The notes beneath the pieces are model-generated. The model did not search any database. It worked only from the letters and a program-made list of their open reading frames with translations, and was not told the DNA's origin. The position numbers were made by a program, and so were the translations under genes. DNA of 63,834 nucleotides, filler included, from Octopus bimaculoides (Eukaryota), in NCBI RefSeq assembly GCF_001194135.2. It is 9 parts of 9 records of this genome, joined end to end, with 100 filler letters (N's around TTAATTAATTAA, not from the genome) between each part and the next. Parts side by side here need not be neighbours in the genome. Positions count along the whole stretch, not along the records: positions 1 to 25,239 come from NC_068987.1; 8 more parts are not named here. One strand, 5' to 3'. This document shows, piece by piece, positions 187-11,781 of this stretch. The stretch's first letter is position 1; each line of letters opens with the position of its first letter.

Positions 187-1397
187 TATGGCATTTTAGG
201 TGAATAGGCAGCTTAAGTGCAATATATTTGCTTCAAGTGCCTAGTAATATTTTTCTTCAACAAAACACTAATAAAGCAAACATTATTGAAATAGTTTGTT
301 CTGCTGGGAAAAAGACAACAATGGTTTAGACTATACAAACGCTTGTCTAAACACATTATATAATTGGTACTTATTCTATCATCAGATATTCTTTAAAGTT
401 AAACGCTAGTCTTTAGAAAAAACAATTTGAATTCCAGAGAGTTACTCATTTCGAAATTTCTGGACATTTAAAACATAAAAAAATATATTTACACCAGGAC
501 ATTTCTATGTAGATTCCAATGTAAATATTATATTCCATTCAATCCAAGTGTTATATTAGTTTACTGTTATGAAAAATGTGGGTATTCTAATAAAAACTAC
601 TTATATTCTATTCAGATTAACAACGGCGGAAAACTCCAAAATTAACATTTTCTTTAGTTCTTTAAAATTATAGTGAAAATAATGATATGCTCATTAAATT
701 TGGCAGAGACATAGAAACAACGTAAGGAGGTATTTTTTTCCAACTGCTCATGATCGTGTACAGTATATAATGGCCGGTATTATTAGTACTTTTATTCTCG
801 ATCTGAAGGGATATAAGACAAATTCTTTTCCACCGTTATGTAAGTGTTAAGATATTAAAAATCAGTTACTTTCTCTCATTTACATTAAAACCAAACAAGC
901 AGGCGAAATAATTATCGCAAAAAGCTTCCTTACATATCGAAATTGATGTCGATTAATCTGAGATCATAGAATTTTTTTTTTTTTTTTAAAAGAATAAGAA
1001 AAACACAGGAAGAAAAAATTCTCATTTCACTAAAGCATGTCTGAAACTGTTTGAAGGGAATGAAGGGGAAAATTCAATTGACTGAAGAATTGGAAAAATA
1101 ATTAGAATATTAATACTTGAGGTTTTACATCAAACACAAATTTGTGTTTGAAATTAGATTATTATGAGAAATAACTAGTTAGTGGAAACTTCTGTAAATA
1201 ACACTGATATATGTCGCAAGCCTACGGTAATAACAAACTGCTTACGTATAATTATCCACTTTATATAAAATAAAATTGTGTTTTATTTTTCAAGCATATG
1301 CGTCTACGAATTCATGCGATGTCCAAAAAAAAACGCAATTTAATCATCATCTAATTGAGAATACGATGGTGATATTGTTGCAAAAATTTATGTATAT

Positions 1398-1456
1398 TCT
1401 TCTCATACATTCCTCTTGCTCTCTCACTTTCTTTCTCTCTCATTTTACAGGTGAGT
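1398..1456 (+). other. Candidate recursive splice site (3' ss directly followed by 5' ss)
   Basis: About 50-nt pyrimidine tract, yUnAy branch-like CTCAC at 1423-1427, then TTTTACAG|GTGAGT with AG at 1449-1450. Confidence 0.5.
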
Positions 1457-1891
1457 AGTGATTTGCGCGTCTGTACGTTACTTTCTGTGAAAGTTGTCTA
1501 AATACGTGGGGACATGAAGGATAAGCCAAATCCAATTTAACTGATCTGCAAACTTACTAAACGCTCAGTGGTTAGTTTGGCTGATGTAGATCGTATCACA
1601 AACAGAATATTGACATATCAATGAAAAGTGTGGTGAAGCTGTAACTGAAATTGCTTATGATGCTGAATGAACGTGATGGAAGTGCAGTGTCTTGTGTCGC
1701 AGAAAAGACGGAAGAAGAGAAGATCTCTGGCTGGAGAAACGTAAGCAGAGGGCATTGACTGAAAATATCTTTCCTGGTGTTTAAAAACGTCCCTGAGTCG
1801 AGTGAGAGCTTACTTCCTTAACTCTGATGGCATTGCTGCTGTCGTTAGGGAGTAATTCATATCCTACATCCTGCTTCTGCTCGTGGCTTAG

Positions 1892-2870
1892 GGGTGCTCA
1901 AATTTCATTAACGTTGCTCCTGATCGTGTACGATATATATGGACTAACAGCTTAAGCCGCAATAGCACATCCGATGGCAACAATGACAGCAGTGACGGTG
2001 ATGAGCAGAGCAACAGCATAAGCGGGCACAATGCCTCCACCGACAACAGCGGTGACGGCGGTGGGGGCAGCATCGCTTCAAACAGCAGAGATAACAATAC
2101 CAACAGTTACGATGGAGGCAGCGGCACTAAATTTACGCGCAGATCCACTAGAAGGACATCCAGGAATATCAGCACGGTGAGAAACACCTCCAGCAACTAC
2201 AAAGACTTCTGGTCCGTTGTTAACGAAACCAACATCGATGGTAGCACATCCAAAACACAGACACGAAAACATGTCGGTTTAACCGCGACACATTTTAAGG
2301 AACACATGAACAACCACAAGTCCTTTTTTAGGATAGCGGAAAGGCGCAGTATCACGTCTCTGGGCAGGTATGTATGGTGATTAAAAGTGGAAGGAACCCC
2401 ATACATAATTGAATGGATGCTCCTTGAACGAGCAGAAGCTTGTATAAAAGGGAGCAAATGATGTAATCCTTGCTCGGTTGAGAGGGAAACAATCCTATAA
2501 AAAATGCTCGACCCGAGTTATTTTTACATTCCAGAAAGGAGGTATTCACTCAATGCCTCCATCTAAAATGTTTCCTCTTCAGACTTGGAATTCCCCATTC
2601 GGTAAATAGTTCCGCTGCAGCTCCTCCAAATATCACAATGGCAAGAGTCGATAAATGCGAGATAGCCCATCCCCTCTAATCACGTCCCGCTCGTAGTACG
2701 GATAATTATTTTTTGTCTCCAAAACCAACTGATCGTTACGTATTTCCTTCTCCAGCTGTAGAGAAGTTACGCGCTTTCAGCCCTTTTGAGTTTGACGAGT
2801 CGCCTATACTGATAAGCGTTTTATAGGTGCGAAACCAACAGTCACTCTATGACCGACTATAGCTTTTAAG
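1892..2870 (+). mobile_element. Penelope-like retroelement 3' remnant (linker, GIY-YIG endonuclease, 3' UTR)
   Basis: One frame from 1892 reads ...RKHVGLTATHFKEHMNNHKSFFRIAERRSITSLGRYVW*LKVEGTPYIIEWMLLERAEACIKGSK*CNPCSVERETIL*. This matches the PLE GIY-YIG pattern YIGxTxxxFKxRxxNHKxSF...STxLSxYIWxLK...WxIxxxA...CxLC. In-frame stops show decay. Confidence 0.8.
2804..2862 (+). ncRNA. Degenerate type I hammerhead ribozyme in PLE 3' region
   Basis: CTATA-CTGATAA-GCG..TGC-GAAA-C..GTCA/TGAC hairpin..GAC-TATAG. Stem I is CTATA/TATAG. The core carries G8>A and the triplet reads GAC instead of GUC. Confidence 0.5.
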
Positions 2871-4507
2871 TTCTTAAGAACCATATTATCTGGAATATGC
2901 TTCTATTTCGAATATATGAACTATTGGCGATACATATAAATATATTCACATACACAACTTTACATGTATACATATGCAAATTAGAAGCACATATTTTCCG
3001 GAGCTAATAGAATTGTTCTATATCTTAAAGGAATGGCTATTTGTCTAGGACTAGTCAAATGATCTACATATCTCCCATGAGACGCTAATACGGGTTGTGA
3101 ATAGATTAAATGTTCATCTATTCCTTGAATGGCAGAGAAATAAGTAAATCTGCCGTGTTTATAGTCAACCCATAGGTTTTTCTATGTATGTGAGTCCCTT
3201 ATGTATGAATGTGAATGTGCACGCTCCAAATACATGTCTCTAAGAACAAATAGATTTCTCAATTCTACTGATATTATAGATGGAACATAGATTAAGGGAA
3301 TTCTTCATGAATAGCATGGAAATATTGATGATAAATTTGTAAATATATCTAATAGTGCCTTTAGCTGCACCGAAATTATCATCAACAAAATTATCGTATA
3401 TTATAAGCCATATCCATCTCGTTGTCTAAGCTACAAGAATAACTGCAATATATTTTCAGAAATAACATCAAATTTGTAGCAGCGTATAATTTCTCTGGCA
3501 GTTTTTATTACGAAATTCTTGACGAAACAACTTCTAGGACCTTTCACTGAAATTATTTATGTATAGTGAATATTTCATTACTATTTATTACATGCCTCGT
3601 TTCATTCGTTTGTCTTTTCATTCCCGTTAAATATTTAATATCCTCTCTTTAGTGAATTAGTCTGTTACATGTTTAATCGAAAACTAATCTGCTCAAACTG
3701 TTTCAGTCATGAAGTTATACTTGCCAGTATACCTGCACGGGCTCTTCAAGACACCTGATGGTTACGAAGCACAGTATACTCAGAACAAAGCCCATATTCA
3801 TGCAAGAGAACAGGTTCCGCTAAACGTGGATGGGTTAAACCTCCAGTATACGTACATACATGCATGTATGCATTCTGTTACACTCGAATAACTTAGCACT
3901 GAAGTTTTATCTATATTCTAAATATAAATCCTTTAAAACTATTTCTTAAAACTGAAGATTATCGGCTAATATTCAAAACAAAATATTTTCAAAACAGAAT
4001 TAATAAAATACTTTAGAGCTGATTCTGAAAAAAATGCGACAATTCTGTCCGATTTACTTAAAATTCGCGCAATATGTAAAATTAATATCACTATTCTTGT
4101 TTTCCATCTGAGAAAATATATTGGCATAAACAGTGTTTAAACCATTTGGATACAAAATTGCGTTCAACATTTGTTGAAAGACAATCTAGTAGTAAGAAAA
4201 TATTTATTATAATCATATGGGAGGGCGTCTTCAGCTGAAATCGTAATACTATATATCATAGCAACAAGGATGAAAGTATTTATATTGTCAATGGTCGGTG
4301 TGTATAATTTTAGTCAGAGTAGTAAATGAACTTGCGAGTATTACAGCAAATAGTTATCCGTGTAATTTATTGCATATTCTCATCGGCATATGTTACATCA
4401 TTAACTAATGAAGCAATTAATAATTGTTACGCTGTGGAATGATGAGATACTAATCGCATTTTTTACTGATTTTTTTCTTTCTTTTACTCTGGGAAATATT
4501 AATTTAG

Positions 4508-4696: not shown

Positions 4697-5823
4697 AGGC
4701 CAACTAAAACAACTTCTGGAGTTGGGTGAATCTAAAATGATGCTCATTATTTAATCCTTCACTTCAAGACCCATAAATATTTCTCATTAAAGCATTGGTT
4801 TTCATATAATTAATTTTCATACAGCTTTTATACTATTTTCGTTCACTTACTCGATATAACTTACATTTTATCTTGGGTAACTTTCCTTTTTAACAAAGGA
4901 AAATTAAATTACGGTACGAAATTCTCCATAAATATAATAATAATGGCTGACATAAAGTTTTTATTCAATCAAGGGTTATATCGAAGGAAACAGCCAAAAT
5001 ATATAAATACAGCGGAAAAATCGAAACCTATTCGGAGAAGTAAGCACAAGATTTCATTTTTCTGGTACTTGATTATATGGTAAGTGAGGAATCGAATGAC
5101 AAGTAGTAACCCATTAATTTTCACAATCGTGATGATTTATTTATGATAAAGGGGATTTTTAGAGAGAATTTAATAATTACCTAATTGAAGTTGCTTGTGT
5201 CTCTTACGTATTTTATCCAAGAGGAAATATGCGATTTCAAGGAGAGCCACTTGGAAAAAAAAAGAGGCATAATTTCAGCTGTATCTACGTTTGACAATAT
5301 TACAAGAAAGATGTATATCGCACCAGAATAATCATGAGAGGCTTTGAAGATAACGAGGAAAATACATTGAATAAAGTTGTTCGACAATAGATATGAGGTG
5401 ACGGGCACAGAACTTAAATGTGAAAGCCATCCGATCCAAGAATCCGTGAGAGAAATGTTAGTGATAACTCAAGTTGTATCCAGTGTTCCAGTTGGATTTT
5501 CGGTTTATTTAATATTCCATCTCAACGAGTGATTTAAATTGGAATGTCGGTTATAGTGATTATTGTACAAAGTTAATGCGAAAAGTATATGCGGCACATA
5601 ATTTGGTGAAATGACATTGAGTCCAAGTAGTAGACCATTTTAATGCTTTTCTGTTTGTTTCAACCGCGGTTATCTGTGTTGAGGATTATGGTTCTGATAG
5701 TATAGTATGATCTCAATATTAATAATCATTGAGCTATTTGTGTTGAAAGGAAATCTGAATATATATTTTCTTCAACTCTTTCTCTGTCCCTCTTTCGCTC
5801 TCGAAAACAATTACAATTCATAG

Positions 5824-5858: not shown

Positions 5859-7627
5859 GTAAGACATAATATTAGAAAGTTAGGTATGAAGAGTTGATGC
5901 GTCAATTTTAAATAATAGATTATTTTTCATAGGGATTCAAAATTTGAGAGCGAAATTCTATTTAAACAATGAGATCTCCACTGGCAATAACTCCTCCGAA
6001 GCATCGTATGCGGTTGATGTAGAGTGTAAAACGCTTCTGTTTTTCAGTAAATGATTGAAAATAACCGCCATAGTTGAATGAATCAAGTTTTGTACACATT
6101 TACAAAATTATTTTGATGATATTTATAGAAGCGATACAGAATTCCCATTTCATAGTTTCTAAAAGGAACAACGCCACATAAAATTGCAATGATTTGGCGA
6201 TATTTTAAATTTTACTAAGGCGAAGTTAATATTTCTAAATTAGTCTTCACAAATGTACGTTATAATATAAAAATAGAGATGATCATAAACACACATCCTC
6301 CTTTCTCTTCATAGAAATCTAAATATAGAACCTATGGTTATTTCATTTTCAATCGATTTCATATTCTAAAACATTTCAACAAATCGTAGGTGATAGATAC
6401 GTTTTTGCGTTTCTGCTTTCTTTTTGTCTGTGCCATCCATCTGTCTCTTTTTTCCCTTTTCTCTCTTCTTTCACTTTATCGTTTCTCCCCACCTTGTCAG
6501 ATCCGCGCATATGCGCACACATACATATGCCAGAAGACTTAGATATACACATACACCATTTAGTTTTAAGTGCATCAATAACCACAACTGATATTGACTG
6601 ATTTAAGTACTCTTAAGATTTGATTACAGTAATGATATCTTCTCAATAAAGGAGCACTATAAATCAAGTCTCGGTATATATATATANNNNNNNNNNNNNN
6701 NNNNNNNNNNNNNNNNNNNNNNNNNNNNNNNNNNNNNNNNNNNNNNNNNNNNNNNNNNNNNNNNNNNNNNNNNNNNNNNNNNNNNNNNNNNNNNNNNNNN
6801 NNNNNNNNNNNNNNNNNNNNNNNNNNNNNNNNNNNNNNNNNNNNNNNNNNNNNNNNNNNNNNNNNNNNNNNNNNNNNNNNNNNNNNNNNNNNNNNNNNNN
6901 NNNNNNNNNNNNNNNNNNNNNNNNNNNNNNNNNNNNNNNNNNNNNNNNNNNNNNNNNNNNNNNNNNNNNNNNNNNNNNNNNNNNNNNNNNNNNNNNNNNN
7001 NNNNNNNNNNNNNNNNNNNNNNNNNNNNNNNNNNNNNNNNNNNNNNNNNNNNNNNNNNNNNNNNNNNNNNNNNNNNNNNNNNNNNNNNNNNNNNNNNNNN
7101 NNNNNNNNNNNNNNNNNNNNNNNNNNNNNNNNNNNNNNNNNNNNNNNNNNNNNNNNNNNNNNNNNNNNNNNNNNNNNNNNNNNNNNNNNNNNNNNNNNNN
7201 NNNNNNNNNNNNNNNNNNNNNNNNNNNNNNNNNNNNNNNNNNNNNNNNNNNNNNNNNNNNNNNNNNNNNNNNNNNNNNNNNNNNNNNNNNNNNNNNNNNN
7301 NNNNNNNNNNNNNNNNNNNNNNNNNNNNNNNNNNNNNNNNNNNNNNNNNNNNNNNNNNNNNNNNNNNNNNNNNNNNNNNNNNNNNNNNNNNNNNNNNNNN
7401 NNNNNNNNNNNNNNNNNNNNNNNNNNNNNNNNNNNNNNNNNNNNNNNNNNNNNNNNNNNNNNNNNNNNNNNNNNNNNNNNNNNNNNNNNNNNNNNNNNNN
7501 NNNNNNNNNNNNNNNNNNNNNNNNNNNNNNNNNNNNNNNNNNNNNNNNNNNCCTAAGCCTGTTATACGTACAAAATTTAACAGATAAATACTAAATATGA
7601 TTTCTAGACAAAAATTTTTCATGGAAA

Positions 7628-7642
7628 ATATTATTATTATTA

Positions 7643-7706
<64 letters not shown>

Positions 7707-8816
7707 TTTTATATTGATTATAACGCTAACCTTATCGATATATCAACTCTTGTTTTGATGCGTCCATATGGGGCCTACCACAAAATTACACTCTTATTCA
7801 TACAAAAATATTCCTAAGGGCAATAATAGTTCATAAGAAAGCGCCTCTTGCAGTACAAAGTACAAGCAAATAGAATCTAAAGCGGTGTGAACTTAATATT
7901 AAGTAGTTAAACTGTGTTATGCGGCGGTAGTGGTGGTGGTGTCTTAAATGAGTAAATCTCATGCGGTCAACAATAAATGTATGTAGACCCATGAGCTGAC
8001 TGAAAATTAAGCCCAGAATGAAAAGTTAATTTAAACAAGCTAATACATGGTGTAGGAAGTAAAGTCAAGTTAAAGTATCGTTAGTTGCAAATAACGTCAT
8101 TGCTGAGATGGCAGGTACAGGCTCTCTTAGGTGAGGTGTAGTTGAGAGGGATTGAGTACTTATGCTCTCTGTATTTTGATTAGGATCATAGTGGAAAGAT
8201 CTGGCATTATTAAAGGGGTTGAGAAGGTTATATTAAGGAGAGATAGATTAATACATATAGTTTGTATTTAGCTATTGTGTGGGGGAGGTGGAATTTATCT
8301 CGGATATGTTGGTGAAGGGATATTACTCCTGGATTACCTATAAGTGGCCTAGGAGTGTAATACTATGAAACTAGCTTTAATTTGGAAGTTAATATATGCC
8401 ATCATTTAGTATCGAAATTTATTATTTCTGTGGTGAAGTGGTCTGGGTGTTATTTGTGGGTTTGATGCAAAGGGTCTCTAAAGCTCCTTATATTTAGAGA
8501 AGGTAAATTTACCCTTGCGCAGGCAAGTTAGTTACTTTCTTCCTTCAAGTTAAGTAATGCATGTTGCGTCGCTAGAATGAAAATTTCTTCATTGATTGCT
8601 GACCCCATTAGATTTACTTATTTGATAACTCCCACCACCGTAAGACAACTCTTAAAATTGTATTTGCTTGGACTTTGTACTGCAGTAGGCGCTTTCCTAT
8701 GAACAATTATTGCTCTTAGGCATATTTTTTTATGAATAGGTGTCATTTTGTGGTAGGCCCCATATTGATGCACCCAAACAAGGGTTGATATATCGACAAT
8801 GTTAGTAATATTAACA

Positions 8817-8882
<66 letters not shown>

Positions 8883-8890
8883 TAATAATA
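7628..8890. mobile_element. About 1.1-kb non-autonomous element with about 250-bp diverged inverted arms, bounded by (ATT)n left and (AAT)n right
   Basis: About 7715-7990 is the reverse complement of about 8590-8818. Example: tcgatatatcaactcttgttttgatgcgtccatatggggcctaccacaaaat versus RC tcgatatatcaacccttgtttgggtgcatcaatatgggggcctaccacaaaat. Identity is roughly 75-80% by eye. Confidence 0.75.
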
Positions 8891-10440: not shown

Positions 10441-11006
10441 AATAAACAACTACATGAAGGTATAATATGCTGGCAAATTCCATTGAAATTTCCACCGCAT
10501 CGACAGGGATATGAAATTGTTTCATTCAGCCTAGGAGACATAATCTCATTCAGGTAATGCAAATTTTGCATTGAAATATTATGACTAGCTATATATTTTA
10601 AATATTAGAAATAATCCAGAATTTTAGTCAAACGAATCTCTCTAAACTTTGTGTATGTTACCGTCAAAATTATTTTCAATATTATAAACACAGTAAGGAA
10701 AGTATTAATATTTTTTATTATCTTCTGTGACATTTTTATGATAAAACCTCCATATAAATATTTTTAAAAACCGTATGTAAGTCTCTTGTCTACAATCGAC
10801 TTTCCAATAACATCATAAAATTAAAGAATACATTAATATTTGTACATATTTTTATTGAAACTTTCATCGTTAGTGAAATTGCGATGGAAGAGTTTATGTG
10901 TGCGTGTGTAAAATGTGTTTGCGTGTATAGCATACAGATATATATTAGAATGTATGTGTGTATATATATACATATATGTATATGTACATATATATATGTA
11001 CACATA

Positions 11007-11038
<32 letters not shown>

Positions 11039-11781
11039 NNNNNNNNNNNNNNNNNNNNNNNNNNNNNNNNNNNNNNNNNNNNNNNNNNNNNNNNNNNNNN
11101 NNNNNNNNNNNNNNNNNNNNNNNNNNNNNNNNNNNNNNNNNNNNNNNNNNNNNNNNNNNNNNNNNNNNNNNNNNNNNNNNNNNNNNNNNNNNNNNNNNNN
11201 NNNNNNNNNNNNNNNNNNNNNNNNNNNNNNNNNNNNNNNNNNNNNNNNNNNNNNNNNNNNNNNNNNNNNNNNNNNNNNNNNNNNNNNNNNNNNNNNNNNN
11301 NNNNNNNNNNNNNNNNNNNNNNNNNNNNNNNNNNNNNNNNNNNNNNNNNNNNNNNNNNNNNNNNNNNNNNNNNNNNNNNNNNNNNNNNNNNNNNNNNNNN
11401 NNNNNNNNNNNNNNNNNNNNNNNNNNNNNNNNNNNNNNNNNNNNNNNNNNNNNNNNNNNNNNNNNNNNNNNNNNNNNNNNNNNNNNNNNNNNNNNNNNNN
11501 NNNNNNNNNNNNNNNNNNNNNNNNNNNNNNNNNNNNNNNNNNNNNNNNNNNNNNNNNNNNNNNNNNNNNNNNNNNNNNNNNNNNNNNNNNNNNNNNNNNN
11601 NNNNNNNNNNNNNNNNNNNNNNNNNNNNNNNNNNNNNNNNNNNNNNNNNNNNNNNNNNNNNNNNNNNNNNNNNNNNNNNNNNNNNNNNNNNNNNNNNNNN
11701 NNNNNNNNNNNNNNNNNNNNNNNNNNNNNNNNNNNNNNNNNNNNNNNNNNNNNNNNNNNNNNNNNNNNNNNNNNNNNNNNN

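What the first reader, a model, noticed from the sequence alone, without database searches (positions are those of the whole stretch)
1398..1745. Textbook recursive-splicing (ratchet) site: polypyrimidine tract-ACAG|GTGAGT
Seen: about 50 nt of near-pure pyrimidines, a CTCAC branch-like motif 24 nt upstream, and TTTTACAG directly followed by the consensus donor GTGAGT. A possible downstream donor AAC|GTAAGC at 1741 would define a 290-nt RS-exon. Established: AG|GT ratchet points subdivide very long introns in Drosophila and in vertebrate neuronal genes. Inference: this window may be part of a giant plus-strand intron that is spliced recursively. I am not aware of this being characterised in cephalopods.
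Basis: partly seen in the sequence, partly recalled or inferred. Interest (0 to 1): 0.7.

Follow-up and report, generated by a model that had tools for sequence, protein, structure and literature searches.

The report
Perfect back-to-back splice signal, unproven use
A very strong intron-end signal sits directly against a perfect intron-start signal at 1450/1451, at the left edge of an exon-like block, so it could be a recursive splice site, but no RNA, annotation or cross-species data could be reached to show that it is used.

Summary
A 56-nt pyrimidine tract (1395-1450) ends in TTTTACAG, which abuts GTGAGT at 1451. AAC|GTAAGC lies 290 nt downstream. With a generic splice-site matrix, this one position is both the best acceptor and the best donor of the window, on both strands.

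The core YAGGTRAGT alone is at chance level (1 found, 0.64 expected). With the window's own density of pyrimidine tracts, I estimate 0.003 such composites per window and about 340 per 2.7-Gb genome. The motif therefore proves nothing by itself.

The context does not look like the middle of a giant intron:
- The site lies at the left edge of a 1.45-kb GC-richer block (about 1412-2858).
- That block holds the window's best exon candidate, ORF 1892-2377 (+), bounded by a good acceptor and a good donor.
- An ATG at 1657 joins that ORF in frame across a 151-nt GT-AG intron.

The likeliest reading (about 0.45) is a real + strand acceptor opening an exon at 1451, whose first bases regenerate a donor. 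That is a recursion-competent "RS-exon" layout. A chance motif (about 0.35) and the deep-intronic ratchet reading (about 0.15, a sub-case of the first) remain open.

No protein, Pfam, Rfam or metagenome relative was found. Annotation, RNA evidence, conservation and the cephalopod origin were all untestable.

The parts
1395..1450 (+). Polypyrimidine tract ending in TTTTACAG (3' splice-site signal). Contains yUnAy branch-like motifs with their A at 1405 and 1426.
   Evidence: Acceptor matrix score is 15.0 bits, rank 1 of 2446 AG sites on both strands. Includes a 16-nt tandem duplication, 1414-1445.
1451..1456 (+). GTGAGT, a consensus 5' splice-site core directly after the AG. With CAG before it, this is a 9/9 match to the donor consensus.
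   Evidence: Donor score is 13.8 bits, rank 1 of 2681 GT sites.
1451..1740 (+). Candidate RS-exon or ordinary exon of 290 nt. Stops occur in all three frames within 17 codons of its start. An ATG at 1657 opens 28 codons that run to the end of the interval.
   Evidence: three-frame translation; donor list; spliced model.
1741..1746 (+). GTAAGC, the candidate donor that would close the 290-nt exon. It is far weaker than the donor at 1451.
   Evidence: Score 7.0 bits, 97.5th percentile of + strand GT sites. Other weaker candidates lie at +55, +120 and +182.
1741..1891 (+). Candidate 151-nt GT-AG intron between the 290-nt exon and ORF B.
   Evidence: Donor at 1741 and acceptor cttag|G at 1891/1892 (9.2 bits, 99.2th percentile). 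The reading frame is kept across it.
1892..2367 (+). Best exon candidate of the window (ORF B). It is an open frame of 158 codons plus 2 nt, rich in Ser/Asn/Asp/Gly, and ends at CAG|GTATGT.
   Evidence: It lies in the longest + strand ORF, 162 codons, p about 0.01 against local dinucleotide shuffles. It ranks first of 151 ORFs for an acceptor at its start plus a donor at its end. It has no homologue anywhere.
1412..2858 (.). GC-richer block (0.38-0.56, against 0.23-0.32 upstream and 0.27-0.37 downstream). The composite splice signal sits at its left edge.
   Evidence: Maximum-likelihood change-points are 1412 (support 1391-1672) and 2858 (support 2803-2894).

Best explanation
Position 1450/1451 is a genuine + strand 3' splice site. 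It opens an exon-like block, and the first six bases of that exon (GTGAGT) rebuild a consensus 5' splice site once an upstream exon has been joined to 1451.

Proposed mechanism, inferred and not shown:
1. U2AF/U2 recognise the long pyrimidine tract and the AG.
2. The exon is defined with the help of a downstream donor. The best candidate is GTAAGC at 1741; weaker ones lie at +55 to +182.
3. An upstream exon, which lies beyond the left end of the piece, is spliced to 1451.
4. The regenerated donor at 1451 then competes with the exon's own donor.
   - If the regenerated donor wins, the 1451-1740 segment is removed with the next intron and the upstream exon is joined to the next acceptor. The best candidate is 1892. 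This outcome is recursive splicing.
   - If the 1741 donor wins, the 290-nt exon stays in the mRNA and brings in an ATG (1657) that is in frame with the exon candidate at 1892-2367.

This is the 'RS-exon' layout described in flies and mammals, not a zero-length ratchet in the middle of a giant intron.
For: Shown by the sequence:
- The site is the top acceptor and the top donor of the window.
- All downstream donors within 300 nt are 7-9 bits weaker. In Drosophila that relation favours use of the ratchet donor (PMC8605326).
- Recursive 3' splice sites are reported to be stronger than ordinary ones (PMC6110457).
- The site lies within the support interval of the left edge of a GC-richer block, 1412-2858, as expected for an intron-to-exon boundary in an AT-rich genome.

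Evidence that the + strand is the sense strand:
- ORF 1892-2377 is the longest + strand ORF (p about 0.01).
- It is the only one of 151 ORFs bounded by both a 99th-percentile acceptor and a 99th-percentile donor.
- ATG 1657-1740, the 151-nt GT-AG intron and 1892-2367 keep one frame, and a third segment from 2756 closes a 197-codon ORF.
- Pyrimidine tracts lie 9:1 on the + strand.
Against: - No RNA evidence of any kind could be obtained.
- ORF B has no relative among 5.8 billion protein clusters or 1.84 billion representatives, and no Pfam domain.
- No ORF of 38 aa or more, on either strand, matches any known protein. No annotated gene is therefore anchored here.
- ORF B lies in T-poor DNA with a three-base periodic, low-complexity character, where several frames on both strands are open. 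It may not be coding.
- The supposed introns inside the block are as GC-rich as the supposed exons. That fits a single unit, such as a long terminal exon or a transposon fragment, as well as it fits an exon cluster.
- About 340 equally good composites are expected by chance in a genome of this kind.
- CT-rich low-complexity tracts are common on this strand of the window.
Confidence: 0.45

Rival explanations
1. Chance juxtaposition with no function. A CT-rich low-complexity tract, partly made by a 16-nt tandem duplication, happens to be followed by CAGGTGAGT. The region is not transcribed on the + strand, or the site is ignored.
For: - The core motif occurs at the chance rate: 1 found against 0.64 expected.
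- Comparable pyrimidine tracts occur at nine + strand places in the window.
- The tract contains a tandem duplication.
- No homologue, annotation or conserved copy was found.
Against: - The expected number per window is only 0.003.
- The coincidence of the rank-1 donor with the rank-1 acceptor has an expected count of about 2e-5 per window under independence.
- The site coincides with the correct-side edge of a GC-richer block.
- It lies 441 nt upstream, on the same strand, of the window's only well-bounded exon candidate.
Confidence: 0.35
2. The site is a deep-intronic ratchet point with a cryptic, always-skipped RS-exon, and it subdivides a giant + strand intron. This is a special case of the best explanation.
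For: - The motif matches the Drosophila ratchet-point description: juxtaposed strong SA|SD, and a weak downstream donor (PMC8605326; PMC6110457).
- The segment after 1451 has stops in all frames, as cryptic RS-exons generally do.
- No upstream exon candidate is seen in the 1.45 kb to the left.
Against: - The 3' side is not intron-like. A GC-richer block starts at the site, and an exon candidate starts at 1892. The second-step intron would be only about 441 nt.
- Fly cryptic RS-exons are about 50 nt (PMC8605326), not 290 nt. Weaker donors at +55 and +120 could serve, however.
- No second ratchet-like site exists in the remaining 23 kb.
- Neither intron length nor the host gene is known.
Confidence: 0.15
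3. Ordinary 5' splice site. A short first coding exon ends at 1450. The ATG at 1366 has a good Kozak context (A at -3, G at +4) and opens MVILLQKFMYILLIHSSCSLTFFLSHFT, a hydrophobic, signal-peptide-like stretch encoded by the pyrimidine tract. CAG|GTGAGT is simply its donor.
For: - The frame is open from 1252 to 1455.
- The ATG context is read directly.
- A CT-rich tract translates to Leu/Phe/Ser in this frame.
- A consensus donor always carries AG before the GT.
- A TATATAAA sequence lies at 1262-1269.
Against: - The supposed exon is AT-rich (0.28-0.30 GC), while the supposed intron is GC-richer. That is the reverse of the usual relation.
- Three upstream ATGs lie at 1298, 1314 and 1319.
- Any frame of a CT tract looks hydrophobic, so the peptide is not diagnostic.
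- The phase-1 end does not fit the acceptors I checked by eye (exon starts 1892, 1951, 1957 and 1966) for the frame of ORF B; this was not a full scan.
- No homologue was found.
Confidence: 0.08

Closest known systems
Drosophila intronic ratchet points with cryptic RS-exons (Ubx, kuz, Bx and others; Hatton 1998, Duff 2015, Joseph 2018, Pai 2018, as summarised in PMC8605326 and PMC6110457)
   Same: - A strong 3' splice site is juxtaposed to a 5' splice site around AG|GT.
- The acceptor is unusually strong.
- The downstream donors that could define a cryptic exon are much weaker than the ratchet donor.
- The following sequence is non-coding in all frames.
   Different: - Location inside a very long intron is not shown.
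- An exon-like block follows immediately.
- The best downstream donor gives 290 nt, against about 50 nt in flies.
- Conservation and RNA intermediates are unknown.
- The organism is not an insect.
Expressed RS-exons: Ubx m1/m2 in flies, and mammalian RS-exons whose regenerated donor is repressed by the exon junction complex (Sibley 2015 and Blazquez 2018, as cited in PMC8605326)
   Same: The candidate exon starts with a consensus donor, has its own downstream donor, has normal exon size (290 nt), and may contribute coding sequence (ATG 1657, in frame with the next exon candidate).
   Different: - Inclusion in mRNA is not shown.
- The coding partner has no homologue.
- The regenerated donor is far stronger than the exon's own donor, which in fly reporters usually predicts skipping.
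Ordinary constitutive exon, or a terminal exon, that happens to start with GTGAGT
   Same: A strong acceptor lies at an intron-to-exon rise in GC content. Stops in all frames soon after 1451 would also suit a last exon with a long 3' UTR, about 1.4 kb to the end of the GC block.
   Different: GTRAGT at an exon start has a probability of only about 5e-4 per exon by composition (my estimate from the base frequencies). ATTAAA hexamers occur at 2380 and 3105, but no AATAAA occurs before 4002.

Membership tests
Intronic ratchet point (zero-nt recursive splice site) | A 3' splice site (pyrimidine tract plus YAG) juxtaposed to a 5' splice site (GTRAGT) at AG|GT | tested here: met
   TTTTACAG|GTGAGT lies at 1450/1451. 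It is the only YAGGTRAGT in the window.
Intronic ratchet point (zero-nt recursive splice site) | An unusually strong acceptor and a strong donor (PMC6110457) | tested here: met
   It is rank 1 of 2446 acceptors and rank 1 of 2681 donors with a generic metazoan matrix. The matrix was written from textbook frequencies and is not trained on this species.
Intronic ratchet point (zero-nt recursive splice site) | A downstream cryptic RS-exon closed by a donor weaker than the ratchet donor (PMC8605326) | tested here: inconclusive
   Candidates lie at +55 (5.2 bits), +120 (5.8), +182 (5.9) and +290 (7.0), against 13.8 for the ratchet donor. Donors of that quality are frequent by chance.
Intronic ratchet point (zero-nt recursive splice site) | Lies on the sense strand inside a very long intron of an expressed gene | tested here: inconclusive
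   - No annotated protein maps to either strand.
- Only 1.45 kb is visible upstream.
- An exon-like block starts at the site.
- The + strand sense is suggested by ORF B and by the pyrimidine-tract bias.
Intronic ratchet point (zero-nt recursive splice site) | Strong conservation of the SA|SD motif between species | not testable with these tools
   No animal genome collection was available. The metagenome scans found nothing.
Intronic ratchet point (zero-nt recursive splice site) | RNA intermediates: junction reads to the site, saw-tooth coverage, and lariats whose 5' end is at the site | not testable with these tools
   No RNA-seq data were accessible.
Expressed RS-exon | An exon with a functional acceptor that begins with a donor consensus and has its own downstream donor | tested here: met
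   At the sequence level only: 1451-1740, with GTGAGT at its start and GTAAGC at 1741.
Expressed RS-exon | The exon is present in at least some mature mRNAs | not testable with these tools
   There are no transcript data, and no protein in the databases contains its 28 codons or those of ORF B.
Expressed RS-exon | The reading frame is compatible with the neighbouring exon | tested here: inconclusive
   ATG 1657-1740 (phase 0) joins 1892-2367 in frame across a 151-nt GT-AG intron. The chance of such a fit is a few percent (my estimate), and ORF B is not proven to be coding.

The most novel reading that the evidence does not exclude
This is a working recursive splice site in a cephalopod, or another lophotrochozoan, and the first outside insects and vertebrates. 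It would be of the RS-exon type. Competition between the regenerated donor at 1451 and the exon's own donor at 1741 would decide whether a 290-nt exon carrying the start codon of a lineage-specific Ser/Asn/Asp/Gly-rich protein is kept or removed.
Probability: 0.15. Interest if true: 0.55.

Novelty: new member of a known kind. Interest (0 to 1): 0.3.

Why it matters
Recursive splicing has been demonstrated in Drosophila and in vertebrates. The paper library held nothing on it for cephalopods.

From general knowledge rather than anything tested here, cephalopod genomes are large, with long introns in neural genes. A confirmed site would show that the mechanism also exists in lophotrochozoans. 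It would also give a concrete locus for asking whether recursion there subdivides long introns or regulates exon inclusion.

As it stands, the finding is a good candidate motif, not a demonstrated case. One motif of this kind is expected hundreds of times per genome by chance.

Tried and rejected
1. **Placing the window on an annotation through proteins.**
   - ORF B alone found nothing.
   - Concatenated, low-complexity-masked ORFs of 38 aa or more found nothing on the + strand or the - strand.
   - An exact look-up of 10 ORFs found none in the collection.
   - phmmer of ORF B against 1.84 billion representatives gave 0 hits.
2. **Pfam on the 10 longest ORFs.** Only sub-threshold noise appeared.
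3. **Rfam and tRNA scans, to find an intronic RNA gene that would fix the host strand.** Only sub-threshold microsatellite 'mir-297/466' matches were found, and no tRNA.
4. **Metagenome scans for the junction 30-mer and for ORF B.** Both found nothing.
5. **Repeat membership.** No second copy of 1398-1745 exists in the window, so there is no sign that it belongs to a repeat family.
6. **Inverted repeat 1751-1787 / 2521-2557 flanking ORF B.** I considered it as transposon ends or as a back-splicing aid. It scores about 14.5 on the scheme (my calculation: 28 of 37 matches), close to the shuffle mean of 13.6, so I rejected it.
7. **CpG observed/expected profile as a promoter mark.** It was uninformative.
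8. **A minus-strand exon entering at 1730, the best minus-strand acceptor.** No matching minus-strand donor appears among the 12 best and no homologue exists, so it is not favoured.

Full report
**Observation**

- Positions 1395-1450 are 82% pyrimidine (A 14%, G 4%). The figure is 86% over the last 50 nt and 95% over the 20 nt before the AG region.
- The tract ends in TTTTACAG, with G at 1450, and GTGAGT follows at 1451-1456.
- CTCAC at 1423-1427 puts a possible branch A 24 nt from the AG. It fits only the loose yUnAy form.
- AAC|GTAAGC has its GT at 1741, so 1451-1740 is 290 nt.
- Part of the tract is a tandem duplication of a 16-nt CT-rich unit.

**Is it more than chance?**

- The core YAGGTRAGT is not. 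It occurs once against 0.64 expected, and 45 of 100 shuffles have at least one.
- AGGTRAGT occurs twice in the window. The second copy, at 15323, has no pyrimidine tract.
- The composite is exceptional within the window. I scored it with a generic metazoan splice-site matrix written from textbook frequencies, not trained on this species. The position is rank 1 of 2681 GT donors (13.8 bits) and rank 1 of 2446 AG acceptors (15.0 bits) on both strands. The next best AGGT composite scores 17 bits in sum, against 29 here.
- Tracts at least this pyrimidine-rich cover 0.46% of positions: 198 on the + strand and 18 on the - strand. Multiplied by the composition-based probability of the core, this gives about 0.003 composites per window, but about 340 per 2.7-Gb genome.
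- A site picked out of a genome scan therefore cannot be called functional on its motif alone.

**Context**

- The window is AT-rich and full of microsatellites, with four assembly gaps.
- The site has no second copy in the window.
- It lies at the left edge of a GC-richer block. GC is 0.23-0.32 in 1001-1400 and 0.38-0.56 from 1401 to 2900. The change-points are 1412 (support 1391-1672) and 2858.
- Inside this block lies the longest + strand open frame, 1892-2377 (162 codons; p about 0.01 against local dinucleotide shuffles).
- Of 151 open frames of 50 codons or more, it is the only one with a 99th-percentile acceptor exactly at its start (cttag|G, 9.2 bits) and a 99th-percentile donor just before its end (CAG|GTATGT, 9.9 bits). 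The runner-up scores 7.1 and lies in a microsatellite.
- An ATG at 1657 opens 28 codons that end at the GTAAGC donor. They join 1892-2367 in frame across a 151-nt GT-AG intron. A further acceptor at 2756 closes a 197-codon frame.
- Pyrimidine tracts lie 9:1 on the + strand.
- Together these points suggest, but do not prove, that the + strand is transcribed and that an exon cluster, or one long exon, begins at 1451.

**What could not be obtained**

- No protein in 5.8 billion clusters matches ORF B, or any masked open frame of 38 aa or more on either strand.
- None of 10 ORFs is in the collection by exact look-up.
- phmmer against 1.84 billion representatives found nothing.
- Pfam gave only noise.
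- Rfam gave only microsatellite artefacts below threshold, and there is no tRNA.
- Metagenome scans for the junction and for ORF B were empty.

The window therefore could not be placed on any annotation, and neither conservation nor the cephalopod origin could be checked. ORF B lies in T-poor, three-base periodic, low-complexity DNA where several frames on both strands are open. Its coding status remains doubtful. The supposed introns inside the block are as GC-rich as the supposed exons.

**Mechanism and weights**

In Drosophila, ratchet points are juxtaposed acceptor and donor sites with ultraconserved motifs. They lie mostly in long introns. They need a short cryptic exon closed by a weaker donor, and they are used because the ratchet donor out-competes that donor. 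A smaller set of expressed RS-exons exists, and in mammals these are the majority (PMC8605326). Recursive acceptors are stronger than ordinary ones (PMC6110457).

The present site meets every sequence-level criterion:
- The downstream donors at +55, +120, +182 and +290 score 5.2-7.0 bits, against 13.8 for the donor at 1451.
- Stops occur in all frames within 17 codons.

Its setting, at the start of an exon-like block with a start codon inside the candidate exon, resembles an RS-exon more than a zero-length ratchet deep in a giant intron.

My estimates are:

| Reading | Weight |
|---|---|
| Real + strand acceptor opening an exon at 1451, recursion-competent | about 0.45 |
| of which recursion is actually used | about 0.25-0.3 |
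| Chance motif without function | about 0.35 |
| Plain donor of a hydrophobic first exon (ATG 1366, good Kozak context, frame open to 1455) | about 0.08 |
| Other readings | the rest |

The plain-donor reading is weakened because the supposed exon is the AT-rich side, and because three upstream ATGs precede the ATG at 1366.

**Comparison and novelty**

If used, the site would be a new member of a known kind: recursive splice sites or RS-exons, in a group where none has been described. The library holds one paper with both 'recursive splicing' and 'cephalopod', and its title and abstract concern another topic. Nothing in the anatomy departs from the known mechanism.

**Verdict**

- Interest is modest (0.3). 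This is a clean candidate worth a look in RNA-seq, not a discovery.

Noticed in passing
window 1892-2377 (+): This 162-codon open frame, rich in Ser/Asn/Asp/Gly, is bounded exactly by a good acceptor and a good donor. It is the best exon candidate of the window. It has no relative in any protein database searched and no Pfam domain, so it is either an orphan exon or a composition-driven open frame.
   Followed up: yes
window 1412-2858: A 1.45-kb GC-richer block (0.38-0.56) sits in AT-rich surroundings. Its nature is unresolved: it could be an exon cluster, one long terminal exon, or an old transposon fragment.
   Followed up: partly
whole window; + strand tracts at 1395-1450, 5762-5803, 6416-6499, 11982-12024, 12220-12294, 12328-12367, 19834-19962, 23814-23861, 24033-24086; one - strand tract at 13395-13435: Long pyrimidine-rich tracts lie 9:1 on the + strand. 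This may be a mark of + strand transcription or of an orientation bias of repeats, or it may be chance.
   Followed up: partly
window 1130-1151: A perfect 22-nt palindrome, TCAAACACAAATTTGTGTTTGA. It is the best inverted repeat of 900-3300, and only 0.5% of shuffles reach its score.
   Followed up: partly
window 19740-19961 and 24878-25102: Two direct copies (77% identical) of a short SINE-like element with a conserved core of about 110 nt. The core includes TGTCTAGGGGAAATTTCG.ACCTGGGTTCTCATTCCTAAGG. One copy is followed by a (TTC)n tail and the other by an (ATT)n tail.
   Followed up: partly
window 7635-7888 and 8645-8890: An inverted pair of 254-nt repeats, 86% identical. Each adjoins a (TAT)n or (TAA)n microsatellite, and they are about 750 nt apart. 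This may be two copies of one element in opposite orientation, or a foldback structure.
   Followed up: no
window 15993-16183 / 19179-19357, and 22873-22988 / 23116-23223: Two further inverted repeat pairs, 72% and 75% identical. The first is associated with (CA)n/(GT)n arrays.
   Followed up: no
window 22318-22872 (-): This 185-codon frame is the longest open frame of the window. It has no Pfam match and no database relative.
   Followed up: partly
window 15316-15331 (+): The second AGGTGAGT of the window (aag|GTGAGT) is the rank-2 donor. It is preceded by a TA/TG microsatellite instead of a pyrimidine tract, so it is not a ratchet-like site.
   Followed up: yes
window 10951-11042, 12607-12714, 23550-23726: Rfam matches to mir-297, mir-466 and mir-3688, all far below their gathering scores, fall on TA/TG/CA microsatellites on both strands. 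They are artefacts of simple repeats.
   Followed up: yes
window 6687-7551, 11039-11781, 16220-16229, 19966-19975: Runs of N (865, 743, 10 and 10 bases) are assembly gaps. Three of them are flanked by microsatellites. Any feature that spans them is unreliable.
   Followed up: yes
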